64,000 nt of DNA, taken from positions 125,612,001-125,676,000 of the forward strand of contig OZ260661.1 in the NCBI GenBank assembly GCA_965285935.1. Direction: 5' to 3'. Shown here in pieces: positions 10,947 through 51,034 of the stretch (position 1 is the first letter of the stretch; every line of letters starts with the position of its first letter). The position numbers and the translations under genes were made by a program. The notes under the pieces are model-generated. The model ran no database searches, was not told where the DNA came from, and worked only from the letters and a program-made list of their open reading frames with translations. This DNA comes from Ophelia neglecta (taxonomy: Eukaryota).

Positions 10947-12125
10947 ATGAAATTTACACTGATCATATTGTGTGGACTCTCTCTGAGCCTTTCTATTGAC
11001 CGGTCATTTACGCTGACTTGCGACGATTTGTGCCGTCTGCCTGATTGTTACTGCCAGACCCAGGCGGTTCCTAATGGACTCAACGCTAGAAAAATACCGC
11101 AGATGGTGTCATTCACCTTCACAGGAGCTGTCACCGAAGCCACACGGAAAAGGATAGCAGAGATATTCACCTCCACTTACAAGAATCCGAATGGCTGCCC
11201 GATAGCCATGACCTTTTATGTCCTGGGTCAGTATACAAGGTATTGCAGCGTCCATTATTTATACATACGCGGACACGAGATCGGAGTTCAAGCTTTTAAC
11301 ACATCATGGCCCGATTCCTGGTCACGTGATAAATGGACCAAACAGGTGTCTGGTTTCAGAGACTATCTTTCTAAGGAAGCTCACATTCCTTTGGATGAGA
11401 TTGTCGGCATGCGTGCTCCCATGTTACATCCTGGCGGAGACAAGCAGTTTCAAATGCTGCTAGAAGAGGAATTCAAATACGATTCCAGTCTGAAAACCAG
11501 GTCGCTATCACAGTGGCCCCAGACTTTATACTTACCGTGGCAGGACTGCCACACCCCAAAATACTGTCCTAACCAAACCTATCCCACAATGTGGGAAATC
11601 CCAATCAGCACTCTCGAAACAGCCCGACAACCGTGCACCTTCCTCGACGAATGCGTCACCTCCGACGCCCTGCGCACGCATCAGGAAATATTGGCATTAC
11701 TTATCAAAAACTTGGAGCGGAACTACATTTCCACTAGGTCCCCTTTACAGATAAACATGAGAACGGACTCGCTGTCCGACCTGGCAACCAGAACCGCATT
11801 ACAACAATTTCTGGATTACCTAACGGACCGCGAAGATACCTGGGTGGTCTCAGCGACTGACGTCATCGAGTGGATGCAATACCCAGTGACCTATGACATT
11901 GCAAATACATTTGAACCATGGATGTGCCCAAAGCGGAAATTGAACACACGATGTGCCCTTGGCAAGGACAACCGAACCGTTATAGCTGTGTTACAGAATA
12001 TTGTGGATCCAAACACCCTGATACTGTGGCAAGTGATCATTCTGGCCGTAACATACGTTATAGTGGTCATCTATGACAGGAAGCAAACAAACAATACAAG
12101 TGACGAGGCGATTGATGGCTATTGA
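10947..12125 (+). CDS. Chitin deacetylase-like (CE4/NodB-homology) protein with signal peptide and C-terminal TM helix; probably catalytically inactive
   Basis: 392-aa ORF with animal CDA signatures: C.LPDCYC, PQMVSFTF, NPNGCPI.MTFYV, GHEIG, GMRAP.L..GGD.QF, F.YDSS, WP.TL, WEIP, C.FLDEC, DTWVVS...VIEWMQ.P. Hydrophobic N-terminus and TM segment LILWQVIILAVTYVIVVIY. A tttcag acceptor ends at 10928, just upstream of the ATG. Confidence 0.9.
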   Translation: MKFTLIILCGLSLSLSIDRSFTLTCDDLCRLPDCYCQTQAVPNGLNARKIPQMVSFTFTGAVTEATRKRIAEIFTSTYKNPNGCPIAMTFYVLGQYTRYCSVHYLYIRGHEIGVQAFNTSWPDSWSRDKWTKQVSGFRDYLSKEAHIPLDEIVGMRAPMLHPGGDKQFQMLLEEEFKYDSSLKTRSLSQWPQTLYLPWQDCHTPKYCPNQTYPTMWEIPISTLETARQPCTFLDECVTSDALRTHQEILALLIKNLERNYISTRSPLQINMRTDSLSDLATRTALQQFLDYLTDREDTWVVSATDVIEWMQYPVTYDIANTFEPWMCPKRKLNTRCALGKDNRTVIAVLQNIVDPNTLILWQVIILAVTYVIVVIYDRKQTNNTSDEAIDGY

Positions 12126-20451: not shown

Positions 20452-23400
20452 CTAGGACAACAGTTTGAATTTCAATTTACTCTTAAAAATTGCAATTGTC
20501 TTACTACTAGACAGGCCGGATGGCACAACATGACAATTCCACAAGAGCGGACCAACATAGGCCAGAGTATTTTGCCTCAGTGATGTTCTACAGAAAGGTA
20601 CATCATAGTTTGAAATTGAGCTGCCTCGCATACTGTAATTGTGTTTCCTATTGTAAACCATGAACATATCATTAAAGTTACTCGGCAGTAATCCATTTTT
20701 ATGTTTATACATAAATACACAACACAAATAAATATTCAATTTGAATACATCCAGAAACTCACATTTCTTGAAAAGTAATGCGGTGTGTTCTTTATAGCCT
20801 ACATGACAGACAATTCTAATAAGTTTCTTTTGCAATACATGTAATTTTGAAAGGTAAACCTTGGGCGCTCTACCCCATATTTCATTACAGTATATTAAGT
20901 AAGGATAGACAAATGTATAGTATAATGATCTCAAGGTCAATGTATTCAGCACCTTTCTTGCTTTTTTGATTATTCCAATGCTTTTAGCAATTTTACCAGA
21001 TACATATTTAATATGTTCTGCCCAGTTGAGCTTATTATCAATAATAACTCCCAGAAACTTAGTTGAGATAACGGTATTAATTTTTGTTTCATCAATATAC
21101 ACATTGTAGCTCCGGTTTCTTAATTTAAAATTTGTAGTGAAGAGCATAGTGTGAGTTTTAGACACATTCAATGACAATCTATTAGCCCTTAACCAATCAG
21201 TTATCTTCAACATCTCATTTGACAGAACTTGTTCCATTTCATTAACATCTTTACCCTGCATAAATACATTTGTATCATCTGCAAACATGATTGGGAATGT
21301 TATGTCAGACACCATACTCAGATCATTAATATATAATAAAAACAAAAGTGGCCCGAGTATAGAACCCTGGGGCACACCGCATATTACCCGCCTGTGCGTT
21401 GACACAGCACCATTATATTTGACAAATTGTGTTCTATTATCTAGATAACTTTGCAGCCACTGCAACACCTTGCCGCGCATTCCATAGTATTGTAGCTTTG
21501 ATAGAAGTATATTGTGGTCCACTGTATCGAACGCCTTAGCAAAATCCAGAAACACCCCCAGCACATGGTTACCCTTGTCCAGAGCCTCAGTTATCTTATT
21601 AACTAAAGTACTTAGTGCCATTTGAGTGGAATATCCTTTCTTAAATCCAAATTGATATTCAGTTAATAAATTTAATCCGGTTATGTAATCATTTATCCTA
21701 TTGTACATAATTCGTTCATAGATCTTGGAGAAAACTGGCAATATAGAAACCGGTCTATAATTTTTAAACTCAGTTGGGCACCCTGATTTGAAAAGTGGAA
21801 TTACACATGCCACCTTAAGTTCTCGCGGAACAATACCATGTTCTAAAGATAAATTTATAATGTGACACAATGGTTCAACAAAATCTTGACATGATTGTTT
21901 CACTATTGAAGGCCTGATTTCATCAAATCCTGCACTGCTGTCTCGTAATTTTTTTATAACTTTATACAGCTCTGACACAGTGACGGGATTAACAAACATT
22001 GTACTGGCAAAGTTTCCCTTTAAATAATCAGAAGGAGTTTTAACACCTGTAGGTATTTTCTTGGCTAGGTTAGGGCCTACATGAATAAAAAAATCATTAA
22101 ATTGATCTGATATTACGTCCTTGTCATCTGTCAATTCACCATTGACTCGAAACTCTCTGTTACAAGGCACAAACGACTGTTTGCCAATTATACCCTTTAA
22201 AACCTTCCATGAATATCTAAGATTAGAGCTATGCTTTTTCAACTGCTCTCTTTGGTATTGTTTTTCTGCAATTCCAATTAGTTTGTAATATTTACTTTTA
22301 TATGCGTGATAGGTTATTTGATTAAATACTGTTGGTTTCTTTTGATATAAAGAAAACAATTTATTCTTAATTCGCATAGATTTTTCAAATCCTCTGGTAA
22401 TCCAAGGTTTGAATTTGCCTTTTCTTATCTTTTTTTGGACAATTGGAAATGCTATATCATATGCAGCAGAAAATAACTCAATAAACTTACTATATGCCCC
22501 TTGTGGCTCATTCATATTATAAACACTGGACCAGTCAATATTGGAAAATATAGATCTGAATGAAACCATATTCTTTTCTGTATACTGTCTCAGGTGGATA
22601 AATTCCTCCCTATCCTGATCAACATAGCACTCAGTGAGCAGAAATATTGGCAGGTGGTCAGAAATATCTGTATACAGTATACCAGCAGTTTGCACTGCAT
22701 CTCCAATAGTACTATTAGTGTATATATTATCAATTATGGTAGCCGAAGCATGTGTTACCCTAGTTGGTCTATTTATTAGAGGTACAAAAGAATTTGCAAA
22801 CATGCTATCAACATATGCCTGTGTATCACTGTGAGTGTCATAGTTCAATAGGTTGATATTAAAGTCACCCATAATATAACATTTGCTTTTTTCACTCCTT
22901 ACACCTTGCAATATTAAATCGATATGTTCTCTAAACACTGCTATATCAGTGTTGGGCGGCCGGTAAACAACGCCTACAATTGTTTTACAGTCCTTAGTTA
23001 TAGAACTATTCTTTAATTGAACAAACGTACATTCAATACACTCATTTGTGATTTCTAAGTCAGACCGTTTTATATACTCAATAGATTTATGCAAATACAA
23101 AGATACACCTCCACCTCTTTTTTCTCTTCTAGTACAGTGCACACTGCTATAGTTGTCAATTTCATATAAACCCAGAGTCTCCTCACTGAGCCAAGTCTCT
23201 GAGATTCCCATAATAGAAAAATTGAAATTAATTGTTTGAAGATATTCTGTTAAAGAGCCAAAGTTCTTAGGTGAACTGCGCACATTCAAATGAAACAGTG
23301 ACAATCCATTGATTATTGCTTTTTTCTTAACAATATCACTAAACTCATCCTCTAGGTAGTACCTACATGATATGCTCATACTGTTTGGAGCGAAGTTATT

Positions 23401-23505
23401 AACATCAGGATCGAGATCATTTGTGCAATCATCATCGTCATCAAGCTCAAAATTATTGCAACCAGAAACCAGACTGTTCAGCTTAATGATATCAGTGCCC
23501 TCCAT
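20452..23505 (-). CDS. LINE ORF2: apurinic-like endonuclease + reverse transcriptase
   Basis: Intact 1017 aa. EN motifs HLNVRS, ISETW, GGGVSLY, YRPP, MGDFN, PTR, IDNI, SDHLPI. RT motifs YRPVSIL, QFGF, FLDFAKAFDTVDH, GVPQGSILGPLLFLLYIND, MFADDT, KFLGV. Confidence 0.97.
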   Translation of the reverse strand: MEGTDIIKLNSLVSGCNNFELDDDDDCTNDLDPDVNNFAPNSMSISCRYYLEDEFSDIVKKKAIINGLSLFHLNVRSSPKNFGSLTEYLQTINFNFSIMGISETWLSEETLGLYEIDNYSSVHCTRREKRGGGVSLYLHKSIEYIKRSDLEITNECIECTFVQLKNSSITKDCKTIVGVVYRPPNTDIAVFREHIDLILQGVRSEKSKCYIMGDFNINLLNYDTHSDTQAYVDSMFANSFVPLINRPTRVTHASATIIDNIYTNSTIGDAVQTAGILYTDISDHLPIFLLTECYVDQDREEFIHLRQYTEKNMVSFRSIFSNIDWSSVYNMNEPQGAYSKFIELFSAAYDIAFPIVQKKIRKGKFKPWITRGFEKSMRIKNKLFSLYQKKPTVFNQITYHAYKSKYYKLIGIAEKQYQREQLKKHSSNLRYSWKVLKGIIGKQSFVPCNREFRVNGELTDDKDVISDQFNDFFIHVGPNLAKKIPTGVKTPSDYLKGNFASTMFVNPVTVSELYKVIKKLRDSSAGFDEIRPSIVKQSCQDFVEPLCHIINLSLEHGIVPRELKVACVIPLFKSGCPTEFKNYRPVSILPVFSKIYERIMYNRINDYITGLNLLTEYQFGFKKGYSTQMALSTLVNKITEALDKGNHVLGVFLDFAKAFDTVDHNILLSKLQYYGMRGKVLQWLQSYLDNRTQFVKYNGAVSTHRRVICGVPQGSILGPLLFLLYINDLSMVSDITFPIMFADDTNVFMQGKDVNEMEQVLSNEMLKITDWLRANRLSLNVSKTHTMLFTTNFKLRNRSYNVYIDETKINTVISTKFLGVIIDNKLNWAEHIKYVSGKIAKSIGIIKKARKVLNTLTLRSLYYTFVYPYLIYCNEIWGRAPKVYLSKLHVLQKKLIRIVCHVGYKEHTALLFKKCEFLDVFKLNIYLCCVFMYKHKNGLLPSNFNDMFMVYNRKHNYSMRGSSISNYDVPFCRTSLRQNTLAYVGPLLWNCHVVPSGLSSSKTIAIFKSKLKFKLLS

Positions 23506-47088: not shown

Positions 47089-47490
47089 CTACACAACGTA
47101 ATCCTGGTACTTGATTGGCATCTTCCTGTCGCGAGATGGTCTTGTAATTTGAACCGGTGACATTTTCTCAGTTTTGTCACCGGAACCCGTCACATTACCG
47201 GTATCCTCCTCATGAGAAACATCAGGTGCTTGAAACTCTGCCTGTTGGTTAGGGAGTGGCCGAGATGCGAACTGAGGGGCCCTGGTCGACTTGGCAAGAG
47301 GAGGTGTGCCTGGCAGAAGACGCTTGAAAAATGATGCATTTCTGGTAATAGTAAAGTCTTCATTCCCTGCAGTTATCATAGAGCCTTTCTTAGTCTGTAT
47401 TTCTAAATGTTCTGGATTATATGGCAAACTCGCTGTGTTTTGTTTTGGCTGTTTTACGAGCACTTTATCACCCTCGCAGAGGTATTTTCT
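47089..47490 (-). pseudogene. Frameshifted C-terminal part of the integrase
   Basis: The shifted frame reads LCEGDKVLVKQPKQN...KGSMITA...RNASFFK...RPSRDRKMPIKYQDYV*, the usual Mag-type integrase tail. Confidence 0.8.
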
Positions 47491-50400
47491 GTCTCTGAGG
47501 GATTGATATTTCAGGAAGCTGAGTTTTCAATTTTCTCCCATTTAATGCCTCTGCTGGTGAAATGTGCGTACTACAATGTGGCGTTGCTCTGTACTGACGA
47601 AGGGACTTGTAAAGCTCTTGTTTCCAACTTTTACCTGTAGCAGCTGCGATACGTAATGTTTTTGCAATATTTCTCATGAACTGTTCAGCCTCACCATTCG
47701 CCTGAGGCCATAATGGAGTAACTTTCCGGTGTGAAAAACCCAAATAATCTGCAAACTGACTTAATTCTCTGCCATTGAACGGGGGACCATTATCCGTTTT
47801 TACTATGAATGGTATTCCCTGTCTGGCAAATATAGCATCCAACTTCGGTATTGCCGCTTTGGCCGACGTAGTGGTAACAACCTCCACCTCCGGAAACCTG
47901 CTAAAGTCATCAATCACAACAAGCAAATATTCCCCTGAAGGCAGTGGCCCTTTAAAATCCACAGACACCTCCCTCCATGGGCCTTCTGGTAAAGGGGTGG
48001 GTTTTATTGGCTCAGGCGGCTGTCTGACATAAGTTGCCACCTGACATGGACTGCACTGTTTCACAAGTGTCTCTACCCCTTTATCGATTCCAGGGAACCA
48101 AACTTTTTCTCTCAGGAGTGCTTTTGTCTTTGCTATTCCCTGGTGACCAATATGAGCAAGATCTATAGCTTCCTGTTGAAGTGACGTGGGCATAATCAGC
48201 CGATTTCCTCTCAAAACTACTCCTTTGTATATAGCTAGCTCATCTCTTACAAACTTGTAAGGCCTCAACTCTTCATCTTCATCACTCCACTGTCCTGTCT
48301 CTACATATTTGACCAACTTCATCATACAACTGTCATGCACAGTTTCTGCCTGGATCCTGGATAAAGTCATTGCCTTCGGAACAGCATTTTCACAAACGTA
48401 TCTGATATATTCTTCTGCTTCGTCACAAATTTCCTTGTTTTCTGGGTGTCTGCTCAAAAAATCAGCAGGATTTGCAGCACCTCTTCCTGGTCTATAAATC
48501 AGTTTGTATTCATAAGGCATGAGTCTTAACCTCCATCGCTCTATTCTTGCTGACATTGGCTTCTGGCTATTGAAAATGCTTAACAGTGGCTTGTGGTCAG
48601 TGTTTATCTCAAAAAGTGCTCCATACAGGTATAAATGGAAATGTTCCACTCCCCATACCACAGCCAGCATCTCTTTTTCTACTTGAGAGTACCGACTCTC
48701 AACATCAGATATTGCTCTGCTAGCATAACTGACAACCTTGTCACCCTGACTCAAAATTGCCCCAAGTCCGTTTGGTCCAGCATCCACAAACAACTTGCTA
48801 TATTTCTTTTGATCAAAATAGTCAACTACATTTGCGCCAATTAGGCGTTCTTTCAAACAGCTGAACGCCTCCTCCTGCTGTGTTTCCCATTCCCACGGAT
48901 GATCTTGGTGTGTGAGACATCTTAGCGGAGCTGTAATATCTGCGAAGCCCGGAATGAACATGCTAAAATGTTGAGCCATGCCAAGCAGAGACCTCACCTC
49001 ACTGGCATCTTTTGGGCTCTGGAAGTGGACAATAGCATTCACCTTTTTCGGATCTGGCCCAATCCCATTTTCATTCCAAATGTAACCATAGAATGACACT
49101 TCTCGCTGGGCAAACTTGCACTTTTCCCTATTTAGCTTTGCATTGTTCTGCCTGAGCCTCTCAAGAACTCCGCGCAGATTGGCATCATGATCATGATCAT
49201 CTTTACCATATACAATAATGTCATCTGAAATGTTTTTGCATCCAGGCAGCCCACTGAGCAGTTGTGCTATCAAATCTTGGAAGTTTTCAGGGGCAGCGCT
49301 GATTCCAAACATTAACCTAGTATAACGTCGAAGTCCCACATGAGTACTGAATGTAGTAATATACCTGCTTTCTGGTGCCAGTTCCACCTGGTGGTATCCT
49401 GCAGACATGTCCAACACACTAAATACTTTTGCCCCATTTAAATCAGACACCAGTTCCGCGATGGTGGGCATTATATGTTTTTCTCTTTGAACGGCTTTAT
49501 TTGCTTCCCGCATATCGACACAAATGCGCACTTGTCCATTTTTTTTCGGGACAACTACTATTGGACTCACCCAAGGGGTAGGGCCTTCCACTTTTTCTAT
49601 TATTCCCTGATCTTCCAAACGTAAAAGTTCATTTTCTACATCTTTCCGAATATGAAATGGAATTCTCCTGTGCTTTTGCCTCTTTGGCATAACTTGTTCA
49701 TCAATATGAAGTTTAAGGCTGATATCTTTCAATTTTCCAACCCCATCAAATACATCCGTAAACTCATCTGCTATATTTTCTGAAGCTACTCGATACACTC
49801 CAGGCATCTTGATTTCTAAGATTCCCAGTTCTAATGCTGTCTTTCTACCAAGCAGAGCCTCTCCATCACCATCGATAACCACTACCTCAGCCTCGGTTTT
49901 CCGGTCAGAGACCTCACATGTGGCAGTAAATGTTCCCAAGGAAGGTAAAGGTATCTTGGATCCATATGAATACAACTTTTTCTTAGCAGTTGTTGTCTTA
50001 CATTTAACTTGCTTCATCTTTAACTTTTCCCACAAATTCTTGTCAATTATATTTGTGCTTGAACCGGAATCGACAAGCATTTTCACACTCACTCCTCCAA
50101 GAACCAAATTGATGTAGTCAGCAGTACTAGCATTAATACAAAAAGTGTACTCTTTATCCTCGTTCAGGTTATCTGGTTTCATAGTACATTCGTGACGCCC
50201 TTCCTGAGCAAAATTCACCTGCAGCTTATCCGGTTGTTTACATCGTATAGCGAAATGTCCAACGGCCTGGCATTTTGCACATTTCCGATCTATAGCTGGG
50301 CAACTCGGGTCATTTGCTTTATGGCCATCTCTTCCACAGCGGAAACAAGTAATTTTCCATCTTTCTGGCCCCTGAGGACGTTTAAAACCTTGCTCTGGTC

Positions 50401-51034
50401 TGCGCCCTTGCCCAATTTTATTCACAGCTTCTTCTTCAATTTTGTTTACTGCTACTGGCTTATCCGAGCTAATAGTCATATGGTCCATCTGGTACTGTAC
50501 AGCCTCAGTTGATCTACCTATTTTCTGTACTACTTCCAAAGTTAAATCTGCCCCTTTTTCAAGGTATTTTCTCCTTAAAGTATTGGAATGGCAAGCATGT
50601 ACAACCTGATCCCTGACTTGATCATCTTTATCTGTATAACCACAGTTCTTAACTTTCTCTTGCAGTCGTGCTACAAACTGATCAATAGTTTCATTTTCCT
50701 CTTGTCTAGTGCATCGAAACACGTGCCTCTCGTACGTTGTGTTCAGCTGGGGCTTAAAATAGCCATCCAACAAATTACTACCACGGGCATACACAGTTAC
50801 TTCACCGGCTGCCGGGGGCGCCTCTTCGTCTAAAATGTCATAAATGTCTTGTACTTGCTCACCTGCAAGGCATAAAAGAAGGTCCAATTTTTGCTGCGGG
50901 TCGGTAACACCTTTTCCTCCGACATATCTACGAAATCCTCTCATCCATTTCACCCACCTGGGCCCTACACTAGTGGGCTCACTAGAAATGTCAAACTGAC
51001 CTATATTTATCCCGATATCTATGTTCATCGCCAT
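47468..51034 (-). CDS. Gag-Pol polyprotein (Gag with two CCHC knuckles, protease, RT, RNase H, integrase)
   Basis: CFRCGRDGH...C and CAKCQAVGHFAIRC; protease LVDSGS; RT WVSPIVVV, RICVDMR, LDMSAGYHQV, ISDDII; RNase H VDAG, YSQVEKE, TDHKPL; integrase H..H..C..C, VDF, TDNG, GEAE. Confidence 0.97.
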   Translation of the reverse strand: MAMNIDIGINIGQFDISSEPTSVGPRWVKWMRGFRRYVGGKGVTDPQQKLDLLLCLAGEQVQDIYDILDEEAPPAAGEVTVYARGSNLLDGYFKPQLNTTYERHVFRCTRQEENETIDQFVARLQEKVKNCGYTDKDDQVRDQVVHACHSNTLRRKYLEKGADLTLEVVQKIGRSTEAVQYQMDHMTISSDKPVAVNKIEEEAVNKIGQGRRPEQGFKRPQGPERWKITCFRCGRDGHKANDPSCPAIDRKCAKCQAVGHFAIRCKQPDKLQVNFAQEGRHECTMKPDNLNEDKEYTFCINASTADYINLVLGGVSVKMLVDSGSSTNIIDKNLWEKLKMKQVKCKTTTAKKKLYSYGSKIPLPSLGTFTATCEVSDRKTEAEVVVIDGDGEALLGRKTALELGILEIKMPGVYRVASENIADEFTDVFDGVGKLKDISLKLHIDEQVMPKRQKHRRIPFHIRKDVENELLRLEDQGIIEKVEGPTPWVSPIVVVPKKNGQVRICVDMREANKAVQREKHIMPTIAELVSDLNGAKVFSVLDMSAGYHQVELAPESRYITTFSTHVGLRRYTRLMFGISAAPENFQDLIAQLLSGLPGCKNISDDIIVYGKDDHDHDANLRGVLERLRQNNAKLNREKCKFAQREVSFYGYIWNENGIGPDPKKVNAIVHFQSPKDASEVRSLLGMAQHFSMFIPGFADITAPLRCLTHQDHPWEWETQQEEAFSCLKERLIGANVVDYFDQKKYSKLFVDAGPNGLGAILSQGDKVVSYASRAISDVESRYSQVEKEMLAVVWGVEHFHLYLYGALFEINTDHKPLLSIFNSQKPMSARIERWRLRLMPYEYKLIYRPGRGAANPADFLSRHPENKEICDEAEEYIRYVCENAVPKAMTLSRIQAETVHDSCMMKLVKYVETGQWSDEDEELRPYKFVRDELAIYKGVVLRGNRLIMPTSLQQEAIDLAHIGHQGIAKTKALLREKVWFPGIDKGVETLVKQCSPCQVATYVRQPPEPIKPTPLPEGPWREVSVDFKGPLPSGEYLLVVIDDFSRFPEVEVVTTTSAKAAIPKLDAIFARQGIPFIVKTDNGPPFNGRELSQFADYLGFSHRKVTPLWPQANGEAEQFMRNIAKTLRIAAATGKSWKQELYKSLRQYRATPHCSTHISPAEALNGRKLKTQLPEISIPQRQKIPLRG

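What the first reader, a model, noticed from the sequence alone, without database searches (positions are those of the whole stretch)
10947..12125. Membrane-anchored, catalytically dead chitin deacetylase: candidate chitin/chitosan receptor or scaffold
Established: CE4 deacetylases need motif 1 TFDD (catalytic base plus metal Asp), motif 2 H(S/T)xxH (two metal His) and a motif 5 His acid. Seen: motif 1 reads TFTG (11115-11126) and motif 2 reads GHEIGVQAFNT (His to Gln, His to Thr). The motif 5 region reads PLQINMRTD where animal CDAs have PLGL.FH.AW. The frame is nevertheless intact, and the structural Cys, RAP, YDSS and WEIP motifs are kept. There is a signal peptide, a single TM helix and a 16-aa cytoplasmic tail ending in Tyr, and no CBM14 or LDLa domain. 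Inference: a type I membrane pseudoenzyme under selection that binds or senses GlcNAc polymers or organises chitin deposition rather than deacetylating it.
Basis: partly seen in the sequence, partly recalled or inferred. Interest (0 to 1): 0.8.

Follow-up and report, generated by a model that had tools for sequence, protein, structure and literature searches.

The report
Membrane-anchored dead chitin deacetylase family
This intact, intronless gene encodes a cell-surface protein with the fold of an animal chitin deacetylase but none of its catalytic residues; it belongs to an old, conserved and so far uncharacterised family found in at least one annelid, and what it does is not yet tested.

Summary
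Window 10947-12125 (+) is one uninterrupted 392-codon ORF. Its product matches Bombyx chitin deacetylases (PDB 5ZNS, E 1e-48) and its AlphaFold model (pLDDT 87.7) has their fold (TM 0.73). All five catalytic or metal residues are replaced: TFDD is TFTG, the two motif 2 His are Gln and Thr, and the motif 5 His is Arg. It has an N-terminal signal-like segment, a C-terminal TM helix (aa 357-375) and a 17-aa charged tail.

It is not a decaying copy. Against an orthologue from another assembly, synonymous sites are saturated (pS 0.81) while pN is 0.24 in the ectodomain. Only the ORF aligns between the two loci.

It sits in a well-supported clade (SH-aLRT 99) of 20 sequences, all lacking the motifs. 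The clade includes two more paralogues in this genome and a 'hypothetical protein' of the tubeworm Lamellibrachia satsuma.

New here:
- An N-glycosylation sequon sits in the former metal site in 14 of 20 members.
- The TM and juxtamembrane motif (LWxxQ, Tyr, YD[RK]) is conserved and shared with an active Owenia fusiformis enzyme.

Pseudoenzyme, type I topology and selection are supported. Chitin binding or sensing is untested and, for the old active-site pocket, doubtful. Expression is untested. The kind is known, the variant is new, and interest is moderate.

The parts
10947..12125 (+). Complete single-exon ORF, 392 codons plus stop: membrane-anchored CDA-like pseudoenzyme
10947..10994 (+). 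Signal-peptide-like N-terminus (aa 1-16: Lys2, hydrophobic core 3-13, small residues S14 and S16 at -3/-1)
   Evidence: Read from the sequence. AF2 helix 2-15 followed by low pLDDT at 17-21. The match to mature BmCDA chains starts at aa 24-25. Heuristic only.
11013..11954 (+). Ectodomain with the animal chitin-deacetylase fold (aa 23-336): NodB barrel plus loop insertion plus C-terminal loops
   Evidence: phmmer 5ZNS E 1.2e-48; AF2 pLDDT mostly 90-98; Foldseek 5ZNT TM 0.73, rmsd 2.3
11115..11126 (+). Former motif 1: TFTG in place of TFDD (catalytic base Asp becomes T59, metal Asp becomes G60). The clade consensus is T[FY][ST]G, with Gly in 90%
11289..11306 (+). Former motif 2: Q115 and T119 replace the two metal His. 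It overlaps the N-glycosylation sequon N118-T-S, present in 14 of 20 clade members and 0 of 20 active relatives
11412..11423 (+). Motif 3 remnant R156-A-P-M159: Arg and Pro kept, the aromatic residue lost
11637..11651 (+). Equivalent of animal-CDA motif 4 (BmCDA1 AMVDS): T231-F-L-D-E235. Leu233 is clade-specific (90%)
   Evidence: Alignment, motif definition in PMC6463723, conservation
11754..11762 (+). Former motif 5: N270-M-R272, with the catalytic acid His replaced by Arg. The Trp that follows in active CDAs is lost (S275)
11955..12014 (+). Short stalk (aa 337-356) carrying the N342-R-T sequon and the pre-TM motif conserved in the clade (F/L-x-D-[VL]-[IL]-D)
   Evidence: low pLDDT
12015..12071 (+). 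Transmembrane helix aa 357-375 with clade-conserved W361-Q362 near the outer end and Tyr370 in mid-membrane
   Evidence: KD 2.61; AF2 helix 355-386; alignment of 17 clade members
12072..12122 (+). Cytoplasmic tail aa 376-392. It starts with the conserved juxtamembrane Y-D-R-K and ends in D-G-Y, as does the orthologue P0001
12379..12384 (+). First AATAAA downstream of the stop: a candidate polyadenylation signal, not verified

Best explanation
The gene encodes a non-catalytic type I membrane glycoprotein. Its ectodomain keeps the whole animal chitin-deacetylase fold but has lost the Asp-His-His metal site, the catalytic base and the catalytic acid.

Shown:
- It belongs to an old clade in which every sampled member lacks these residues. 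The clade holds three unlinked paralogues in this genome, at least 20 clusters at 50% identity in public assemblies, and Lamellibrachia satsuma KAI0242867.1.
- The clade sits among membrane-anchored CDAs that are still active. One of them, Owenia fusiformis CAH1795761.1, carries the same TM motif.
- The gene is kept by purifying selection, though it evolves about 2.4 times faster than the active paralogue in the same species pair.

Inferred:
- The protein sits at the surface of chitin-secreting cells. I expect it to work without chemistry, as a subunit or partner rather than as an enzyme.
- TM helices that are plain anchors are not usually conserved in sequence. Here the TM and juxtamembrane sequence (LWI[WY]Q, mid-membrane Tyr, cytosolic [RY]YD[RK]) is conserved. 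The helix therefore probably docks to another membrane protein.
- That partnership was inherited from the active ancestor. Chitin synthase or the membrane-bound active CDA are the obvious candidates.
- The ectodomain would then serve as a non-enzymatic module that handles, spaces or shields nascent chitin, or that regulates the enzyme.
- Binding through the old acetyl pocket is unlikely. Binding along the rest of the long cleft remains possible.

My odds:
- Not a metal-dependent deacetylase: 0.9.
- Functional membrane protein under selection: 0.9.
- Binds chitin or chitosan in some mode: 0.35.
- Works through a TM-mediated partner: 0.4.
For: - Fold and homology.
- Loss of all five catalytic or metal residues in WIN and in all 20 clade rows.
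- Clade support SH-aLRT 99, WIN+P0001 100, L005+P0169 100.
- Paralogues L004 and L005, both lacking the motifs and both TM-anchored.
- Selection: pS 0.81 (saturated; 4-fold sites 29% identical) against pN 0.24 in the ectodomain. Between the same two assemblies, dN is 0.29 for the WIN core, 0.38 for L005 and 0.12 for the active L002. Only the ORF aligns between the window and L008.
- The replacement residues are themselves conserved ([ST]-G at motif 1, Gly 90%), and a sequon is present at motif 2 in 14/20 against 0/20.
- TM motif: Q or E at the same TM column in 14/17, YD in 11/17, and the same LWIWE...KRD in the active Owenia protein.
- The genome makes chitin: about 10 chitin synthase loci.
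- Pseudoenzymes are known in CE4: PMC5855634, PMC10967932.
Against: - No expression data. No RNA run holds the locus, and contigs of relatives carry no poly(A).
- No binding, activity or localisation data exist for any clade member.
- Topology comes from hydropathy and an AF2 helix, not from a dedicated predictor.
- The TM motif could reflect lipid or trafficking constraints, or self-association, rather than a partner. A homodimer prediction gave no verdict.
- The conserved Ser/Thr at the former catalytic-base position leaves a small chance of a different chemistry.
- The organism was not identified. 'Chitin-secreting cell surface' is inferred from family history, not from this gene.
Confidence: 0.7

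Rival explanations
1. The ectodomain still binds GlcNAc polymers in the old substrate cleft, so the protein is a chitin/chitosan lectin or receptor that senses the polymer and signals or scaffolds deposition.
For: The fold, the animal-specific loop insertion and the C-terminal loops that shape the long cleft are all kept (PMC6463723). Motif 3 Arg/Pro, the motif 4 Asp and W190/W216 are kept. It is membrane-anchored. The genome has many chitin synthase loci. As background from my own knowledge, GH18 chi-lectins show that inactivated chitin enzymes can become binders.
Against: All subsite-0 contacts are replaced. The Trp after motif 5 and the motif 3 aromatic are lost. A sequon lies in the centre of the cleft in 14/20 members. 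Former active-site positions other than [ST]-G vary within the clade (Gln 50%, Arg 47%), as if unconstrained. The tail is 3-27 aa with no domain. The only biochemically studied eukaryotic inactive CE4 protein, ECU11_0510, does not act on chitin (PMC5855634).
Confidence: 0.2
2. It is still an enzyme, but with a different, metal-independent chemistry or substrate. It would use the conserved Ser/Thr59 or other residues, as PuuE allantoinase does within the same fold.
For: Position 59 is Ser or Thr in nearly all clade members and Gly60 is 90% conserved. H110 and E111 are invariant, and H103 and R108 are clade-specific. Metal-independent CE4-fold enzymes exist, for example 3CL6.
Against: H110 and E111 are equally invariant in active CDAs, so they are probably structural. 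No other polar residue around the old site is conserved. The dead paralogues evolve 2.4-3.1 times faster than the active one. If the sequon is used, a glycan would sit over the site.
Confidence: 0.07
3. It is a functionless processed copy (retrogene) that merely happens still to be open.
For: It is intronless, Pfam-silent, without expression evidence, and has retrotransposons nearby.
Against: The active paralogues L002 and L003 and the orthologues in other assemblies are also single-exon. Synonymous sites are saturated, yet a 392-codon frame is open in both species with 65% core identity. The flanks do not align. The clade is deep, with three paralogues kept.
Confidence: 0.02
4. The C-terminal hydrophobic segment is a GPI-attachment signal, so the mature protein is lipid-anchored with no TM helix or tail.
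For: A sister active paralogue in this genome (L002) does end in a hydrophobic stretch, typical of GPI signals. So do some relatives (P0206, P0210, P0220).
Against: Here the hydrophobic stretch is followed by 17 mostly polar or charged residues that begin with Y-D-R-K. In the paralogues 6-10 such residues follow. The juxtamembrane motif is conserved, which would be pointless if it were cleaved off. By the textbook architecture, GPI signals end with the hydrophobic stretch.
Confidence: 0.03

Closest known systems
Insect single-domain chitin deacetylases, BmCDA8 (PDB 5Z34) and the catalytic domain of BmCDA1 (5ZNS/5ZNT)
   Same: Same fold, including the animal-specific loop insertion and C-terminal loops. 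Same N-terminal Cys-rich start and Cys framework. 28-30% identity, TM-score 0.72-0.73.
   Different: The insect proteins have TFDD, HSxxH and the motif 5 His, and they bind Zn (PMC6463723). They are secreted, and BmCDA1 also carries CBM14 and LDLa domains. The window protein lacks all five residues, has no extra domain, and ends in a TM helix and tail.
Owenia fusiformis CAH1795761.1 (P0183), an unnamed membrane-anchored CDA with intact motifs
   Same: Same single-domain architecture. Same extra Cys after strand 2 (TDYC). Same C-terminal TM with LWIW[QE] and a basic/acidic juxtamembrane stretch. It sits in the same 67-row group as the dead clade, which carries star support (SH-aLRT 96).
   Different: It keeps TFDD, HSITH, RSPF and NMH, so it is presumably active. 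The window protein does not.
Lamellibrachia satsuma KAI0242867.1, 'hypothetical protein LSAT2_010880' (P0292)
   Same: It is inside the dead clade, in the cluster of P0204. Motifs read TYTG, no motif 2 His, RAPL and QINLR.
   Different: Only 33% identical to the window protein. It belongs to a different paralogue lineage. Its gene model ends before a TM segment. Nothing is published on it.
Encephalitozoon cuniculi ECU11_0510 (EcCDA, PDB 2VYO)
   Same: A eukaryotic CE4-fold protein that lacks the catalytic Asp and the metal His and cannot deacetylate chitin or chito-oligomers (PMC5855634, PMC6463723). It is described as a surface protein of the spore wall (title of Brosson et al. 2005, cited in PMC7953033).
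   Different: It is a microbial-type short NodB domain of independent origin, without the animal loops, and unrelated beyond the fold. Whether it is anchored in the same way was not checked here.
Bacillus anthracis CE4 pseudoenzymes BA3943 (7BKF, 6HM9) and BA0150 (4M1B)
   Same: CE4 fold with a disabled active site. They appear among the structural matches and are described as a pseudoenzyme and as catalytically inert (PMC10967932).
   Different: Bacterial, short NodB domain, different residues lost, and no TM-anchored animal architecture.
Catalytically inactive GH18 'chi-lectins' (from my own knowledge, not tested here)
   Same: Concept only: a chitin-processing enzyme fold that lost catalysis and was kept as a binding or regulatory protein.
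   Different: Different fold and family. Chi-lectins are secreted and keep their sugar-binding cleft, whereas here the core of the pocket is rebuilt.

Membership tests
Carbohydrate esterase family 4 (NodB homology domain) | (beta/alpha)7 NodB barrel similar to solved CE4 structures | tested here: met
   AF2 model pLDDT 87.7. Foldseek finds 74 PDB matches at E<=1e-3. The three best are insect chitin deacetylases and nearly all the rest are CE4 (NodB-fold) proteins. Best is 5ZNT at E 2.6e-28, TM 0.73.
Carbohydrate esterase family 4 (NodB homology domain) | Asp-His-His metal triad (motif 1 second Asp, motif 2 H-x-x-x-H) | tested here: not met
   G60, Q115 and T119 stand at those positions.
Carbohydrate esterase family 4 (NodB homology domain) | Catalytic base Asp (motif 1) and catalytic acid His (motif 5) | tested here: not met
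   T59 and R272.
Carbohydrate esterase family 4 (NodB homology domain) | Motif 3 R-x-P-[YF] | tested here: inconclusive
   R156 and P158 are kept, but the aromatic residue is replaced by M159.
Carbohydrate esterase family 4 (NodB homology domain) | Pfam PF01522 match at the gathering score | tested here: not met
   No Pfam family at E<=1 for the window protein, L004, L005 or P0001. The active paralogues L002 and L003 do pass.
Animal-type chitin deacetylase subfamily (BmCDA1/8-like) | Loop insertion between beta5 and alpha5, C-terminal loops, N-terminal Cys-rich start and conserved Cys framework | tested here: met
   The alignment to 5ZNS covers query 25-326 without large gaps. 51 columns are conserved in both the dead and active groups, including nine Cys of the mature domain (C25, 29, 34, 36, 84, 201, 207, 230, 236). 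Loops are defined in PMC6463723.
Type I single-pass membrane protein | Cleavable N-terminal signal peptide | tested here: inconclusive
   The basic-hydrophobic-small pattern in aa 1-16 and the homology starting at aa 24 fit. No signal-peptide predictor was available.
Type I single-pass membrane protein | One hydrophobic helix of about 20 residues near the C-terminus, followed by a charged cytosolic tail | tested here: met
   KD 2.61 over aa 357-375, the only peak at or above 1.6. The tail starts Y-D-R-K. AF2 helix 355-386. The same layout is seen in 16 clade representatives.
GPI-anchored surface protein | Hydrophobic stretch at the extreme C-terminus | tested here: not met
   17 polar or charged residues follow the hydrophobic stretch, and they are conserved with the orthologue. 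This is rule-based; no GPI predictor was run.
Pseudoenzyme kept by selection | Non-synonymous change far below synonymous change; orthologues with open frames | tested here: met
   pN/pS is 0.30 in the ectodomain with pS saturated, so the true ratio is lower. Two paralogues each have an orthologue in assembly ERZ25069296.
Chitin-binding lectin or receptor | Measurable binding of GlcNAc polymers; a signalling-competent cytoplasmic part | not testable with these tools
The tail has no Pfam domain and only a juxtamembrane motif is conserved.

The most novel reading that the evidence does not exclude
The dead ectodomain is an obligate, sequence-specifically docked subunit of the membrane chitin-making machinery of annelids (chaetal or tube-secreting cells). 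It would be held by its conserved LWxxQ-Tyr-YD[RK] helix, a partnership inherited from an active membrane CDA. The conserved N-glycan at the former metal site, whose core is itself a chitobiose, would occupy the old substrate pocket. The protein would then act as a self-liganded spacer or template that keeps nascent beta-chitin fully acetylated and ordered.
Probability: 0.1. Interest if true: 0.75.

Novelty: new variant of a known kind. Interest (0 to 1): 0.45.

Why it matters
CE4 pseudoenzymes are known from bacteria and a microsporidian, and weakly active insect CDAs are known as matrix organisers. A deep, multi-paralogue animal clade that lost the whole catalytic set, kept a sequence-conserved membrane helix and gained a glycosylation sequon in the old metal site has not been described in the literature I could search.

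Pfam does not recognise these proteins, so annotation pipelines label them 'hypothetical'. The one named member I found (Lamellibrachia satsuma) is labelled that way.

If the family works at chitin-secreting membranes, it gives a concrete handle on how annelids build ordered beta-chitin in chaetae and tubes. It is also a clean natural case for studying what a deacetylase fold does once chemistry is removed.

On my tree, loss of the motifs happened at least 10 times among animal CDA domains. 'Number of CDA genes' in a genome therefore overstates its deacetylase capacity.

Tried and rejected
- **Expression.** The look-up of sequencing runs found only three runs of one study, none recorded as RNA. 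Short Logan contigs that carry relatives (L016, L019, L024-L026) were checked for poly(A) ends and none was found. They cannot be called transcripts.
- **Organism identity.**
  - The best named hits of an intronless HSP70 are only 76-79% identical (bivalves, Owenia), which suggests a spiralian but no more.
  - Exact look-ups of H2B, H2A and HSP70 found nothing.
  - Actin is split over two exons.
- **Word-index protein search.** It found only three clade members. The exhaustive profile search was needed.
- **Synteny with the orthologous contig.** None within 3-5 kb.
- **Linkage to chitin synthase.** None of about 10 loci lies near the window.
- **Homodimer prediction** of residues 23-392: 'no answer', score 0.00. 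This is not evidence either way.
- **JC/NG86 dS.** It could not be computed because pS exceeds 0.75, so I report pN/pS as an upper bound.
- **Literature.** Searches for inactive or membrane CDAs in molluscs and annelids, and for chaetoblast deacetylases, found nothing on this clade. Urch et al. 2009 is not held.
- **Rfam.** Nothing in the window.
Full report
**What is there**

Window 10947-12125 (+) is a single open frame of 392 codons with an ATG eight codons after the preceding stop. The window has no N runs, and the gene is richer in G+C than its flanks. Pfam-A finds nothing in the product, even at E 1.

phmmer against PDB sequences gives the two solved insect chitin deacetylases: BmCDA1 (5ZNS/5ZNT, E 1.2e-48, query 25-326) and BmCDA8 (5Z34, E 3.4e-43). 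An AlphaFold2 model built on a 20-sequence alignment has mean pLDDT 87.7, with 90-98 over most of residues 50-330. Foldseek puts the same three chains first (TM 0.72-0.73, rmsd 2.1-2.3), followed almost entirely by CE4 (NodB-fold) proteins. The ESM Atlas shape search returns arthropod and nematode CDA clusters. The homology and fold are not in doubt.

**The catalytic residues**

I use the motif definitions of the BmCDA structure paper (PMC6463723). That paper defines:
- motif 1 as TFDD, holding the catalytic base and the Zn-binding Asp;
- motif 2 as HSITH, holding the two Zn-binding His;
- motif 3 as RAPYL;
- motif 4 as AMVDS;
- motif 5 as YFH, holding the catalytic acid.

The window protein reads as follows:

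| Motif | Active CDAs | Window protein |
|---|---|---|
| 1 | TFDD | T57-F-T59-G60 |
| 2 | H-S-x-x-H | Q115-A-F-N-T119 |
| 3 | R-x-P-[YF] | R156-A-P-M159 |
| 4 | AMVDS (BmCDA1) | T231-F-L-D-E235 |
| 5 | Y-F-H (BmCDA1) | N270-M-R272 |

All five catalytic or metal residues are gone. The Cys framework and 51 columns shared with active relatives are kept. The one slip is that YDSS is a conserved structural string, not motif 4.

**Topology**

Residues 1-16 have the pattern of a signal peptide, and the homology to mature CDA chains starts at residue 24-25. The only hydropathy peak at or above 1.6 is at aa 357-375 (2.61). It is followed by 17 polar or charged residues that begin Y-D-R-K. AlphaFold draws a single long helix there.

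A GPI signal ends with its hydrophobic stretch, and this one does not. The active paralogue L002 in the same genome does end that way. No dedicated predictor was available, so I call type I topology well supported but not proven.

**It is a family, not an accident**

The window's own genome (762 Mb, 223 contigs) has six CDA-like loci:
- the window gene;
- L004 (390 aa) and L005 (408 aa). Both lack the motifs, both have a C-terminal TM helix and a short basic tail, and they lie on other chromosomes;
- L002 (605 aa) and L003 (325 aa), which have intact motifs and pass Pfam PF01522;
- a multi-exon locus, L006/L007, which is also degenerate at motifs 1 and 2.

The word-index search found only three close relatives. 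I therefore ran the exhaustive profile search, since the question of novelty rests on who else has this. It returned 2813 proteins at E<=1e-3.

I located the domains in the best 150 and read their motifs. This gave:
- 16 representatives of about 370-455 aa that lack the residues and have a C-terminal TM;
- 8 with intact motifs and a C-terminal hydrophobic helix;
- about 30 two-domain proteins with an intact N-terminal and a degenerate C-terminal CDA domain.

In a 113-row likelihood tree, the window protein, its orthologue P0001, L004 and L005 fall in one clade of 20 rows with SH-aLRT 99. Every member of that clade lacks the catalytic residues. WIN+P0001 and L005+P0169 each have support of 100.

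The loss therefore predates the duplications that gave the three paralogues. Across the tree, the state active/dead changes at least 10 times, so loss of catalysis is recurrent in animal CDA domains.

**Who has it**

Almost all clade members come from unannotated ENA or Logan assemblies and carry no name. One is named: the cluster of P0204 contains Lamellibrachia satsuma KAI0242867.1, a 'hypothetical protein' whose sequence shows the clade motifs. The genome paper for that species says nothing about it.

In the 67-row group around the clade, which carries star support (SH-aLRT 96), the active P0183 is Owenia fusiformis CAH1795761.1. P0206, outside the clade, is a chiton 'chitin deacetylase 1-like' protein. 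So the clade is at least annelid.

The window's organism was not identified. Its HSP70 is 76-79% identical to named bivalve, gastropod, chiton and Owenia proteins, and exact look-ups failed. An annelid origin is my inference, not a result.

**Selection**

P0001, P0169 and P0006 are the orthologues of the window gene, of L005 and of the active L002. All three come from one assembly, ERZ25069296. This allows a like-for-like comparison over the core domain:

| Pair | aa identity | dN | pS |
|---|---|---|---|
| Window gene / P0001 | 65% | 0.29 | 0.81 |
| L005 / P0169 | 56% | 0.38 | 0.91 |
| Active L002 / P0006 | 81% | 0.12 | 0.86 |

Synonymous sites are saturated. Third bases at four-fold sites of identical residues agree in only 29% of cases, so dS cannot be computed. 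pN/pS of 0.30 in the ectodomain is an upper bound on omega.

The dead genes evolve 2.4-3.1 times faster than the active one, but they are clearly constrained. Between the window and the orthologous contig, only the ORF aligns (66.5% over 803 nt). The flanks do not align and no neighbouring gene is shared. All these genes are single-exon in both assemblies, so intron absence is a family trait, not a sign of recent retroposition.

First, the replacements are not random.
- Motif 1 is T[FY][ST]G throughout the clade, with Gly in 90%.
- An N-x-S/T sequon lies within the twelve residues of former motif 2 (N118-T-S here) in 14 of 20 clade members and 0 of 20 active relatives.
- The clade's overall sequon density would predict about 2 of 20. 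These sequences are related, so this counts inheritance and retention, not 14 independent events.
- If the site is used, a glycan sits at the centre of the old cleft.

Second, the membrane segment is conserved in sequence.
- A pre-TM F/L-x-D-[VL]-[IL]-D motif is present.
- L-W-I-[WY]-Q marks the outer end of the helix, with Gln or Glu in that column in 14 of 17.
- A Tyr sits two-thirds of the way through the helix.
- [RY]-Y-D-[RK] marks the cytosolic face, with YD in 11 of 17.
- The active Owenia protein has the same LWIWE...KRD, so the feature predates the loss of catalysis.

Ectodomain identity within the clade is only about 30-45%. A plain anchor would not be expected to hold such a pattern over that distance.

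**How it most likely works**

Shown: it has the CDA fold, lacks the metal site and the acid/base pair, has a membrane-protein layout, shows long-term purifying selection, and descends from among membrane-anchored active CDAs.

Inferred:
- It cannot carry out metal-dependent deacetylation.
- Its acetyl-recognising pocket is dismantled. The residues replaced are both Asp, both His, the acid His, the motif 3 aromatic, and the Trp after motif 5 that is invariant in the active set.
- The conserved helix points to a specific partner in the membrane, a relationship inherited from the active ancestor.
- Chitin synthase (about 10 loci in this genome) or the surface-anchored active CDA are the natural candidates, but nothing here tests them.
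- The ectodomain may still lie along chitin through the long animal-type cleft formed by the loop insertion and C-terminal loops. I put this at about one in three.
- A receptor that signals by itself is unlikely, given a tail of 3-27 residues with no domain.

A homodimer prediction returned no verdict and counts for nothing.

**Comparison with known proteins**

It works like, and partly is, a CE4 protein. It passes the fold test and the animal-CDA architecture test. It fails the metal triad, the catalytic pair and the Pfam threshold.

It should be filed as a CDA-like pseudoenzyme, not as a chitin deacetylase. Precedents for inactive CE4 proteins are:
- E. cuniculi ECU11_0510, which cannot deacetylate chitin or chito-oligomers (PMC5855634; PMC6463723);
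- B. anthracis BA3943 and BA0150 (PMC10967932; structural matches).

These are short microbial NodB domains of independent origin. I found no paper on membrane-anchored inactive CDAs in annelids or molluscs. That is an absence in the held library only.

**Verdict**

The pseudoenzyme, type I and selection parts of the interpretation are supported. The chitin-binding or sensing part is untested, and for the canonical pocket it is doubtful.

It is a new variant of a known kind (a CE4 pseudoenzyme) and of moderate interest. Its value lies in the depth of the clade, the conserved membrane helix and the sequon in the former metal site. Together these give concrete experiments.

Noticed in passing
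window 20452-23505 (-): Intact 1017-aa ORF with endonuclease/exonuclease/phosphatase and reverse-transcriptase domains: a LINE-type non-LTR retrotransposon. Described only.
   Followed up: partly
window 47468-51034 (-): Intact 1188-aa Gag-Pol-like ORF (zinc knuckle, aspartyl protease, RT, RNase H, integrase): a Ty3/gypsy-type LTR retrotransposon. LTRs were not looked for. Described only.
   Followed up: partly
L002:1372-3189 (G000 C1, about 72.12 Mb): An active-motif CDA paralogue (605 aa) followed by a roughly 200-aa Ser/Thr/Pro-rich mucin-like stalk. It ends in a hydrophobic stretch at the very C-terminus, like a GPI signal. Its core is 81% identical to its orthologue P0006.
   Followed up: partly
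L006:1441-1860 and L007 (G000 C7, about 21.49 Mb): A multi-exon CDA-like locus whose first matching exon reads FSFQYN at motif 1 and HEIGDNTVD at motif 2. It is a fourth degenerate CDA-like gene in this genome, outside the intronless set.
   Followed up: partly
P0140-P0164 and others (public assemblies, not this genome): About 30 representatives are two-domain proteins. They have an N-terminal CDA domain with intact motifs (TFDD, HSVTH, RSPF, INMH) and, after a linker that ranges from a few residues to about 900 aa, a C-terminal CDA domain with degenerate motifs (T[IV]DG, no His). The C-terminal domains form their own clade with support of 99. This is a separate, independent pairing of an enzyme with a dead copy. 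The source organisms are unknown.
   Followed up: partly
P0137 (2316 aa, public assembly): A protein with four tandem CDA domains, all with intact motifs.
   Followed up: no
G000 C9 30.19-31.03 Mb, 48.83 Mb, 55.18-55.20 Mb; C8 47.0 Mb; C2 98.55 Mb; C5 26.16-26.17 Mb: About ten chitin synthase (PF03142) loci, several of them clustered on C9. This is an expanded family.
   Followed up: no
G000 C9 11.23-11.40 Mb and 13.51-13.65 Mb; C2 7.26-7.32 Mb; C1 120.94-120.98 and 124.63-124.66 Mb; L032: Large tandem arrays of histone repeat units, about 6.6-7.8 kb each. In the unit read (L032), the H2A copy has an unusual C-terminal extension after LLPKK.
   Followed up: no
G000 C2 74.43 Mb and 104.69-105.03 Mb; C7 60.25 Mb; C5 66.19 Mb: Two intronless HSP70 genes (637-639 aa) and a cluster of multi-exon HSP70-like copies, some with stops.
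   Followed up: no
L019 (Logan contig from run ERR1712226): A close relative (P0218) of the active paralogue L002 sits on a 2.7-kb contig from this public run. From memory, this run range belongs to an ocean plankton survey. If so, a relative of the window's organism occurs in plankton samples. Not checked.
   Followed up: no
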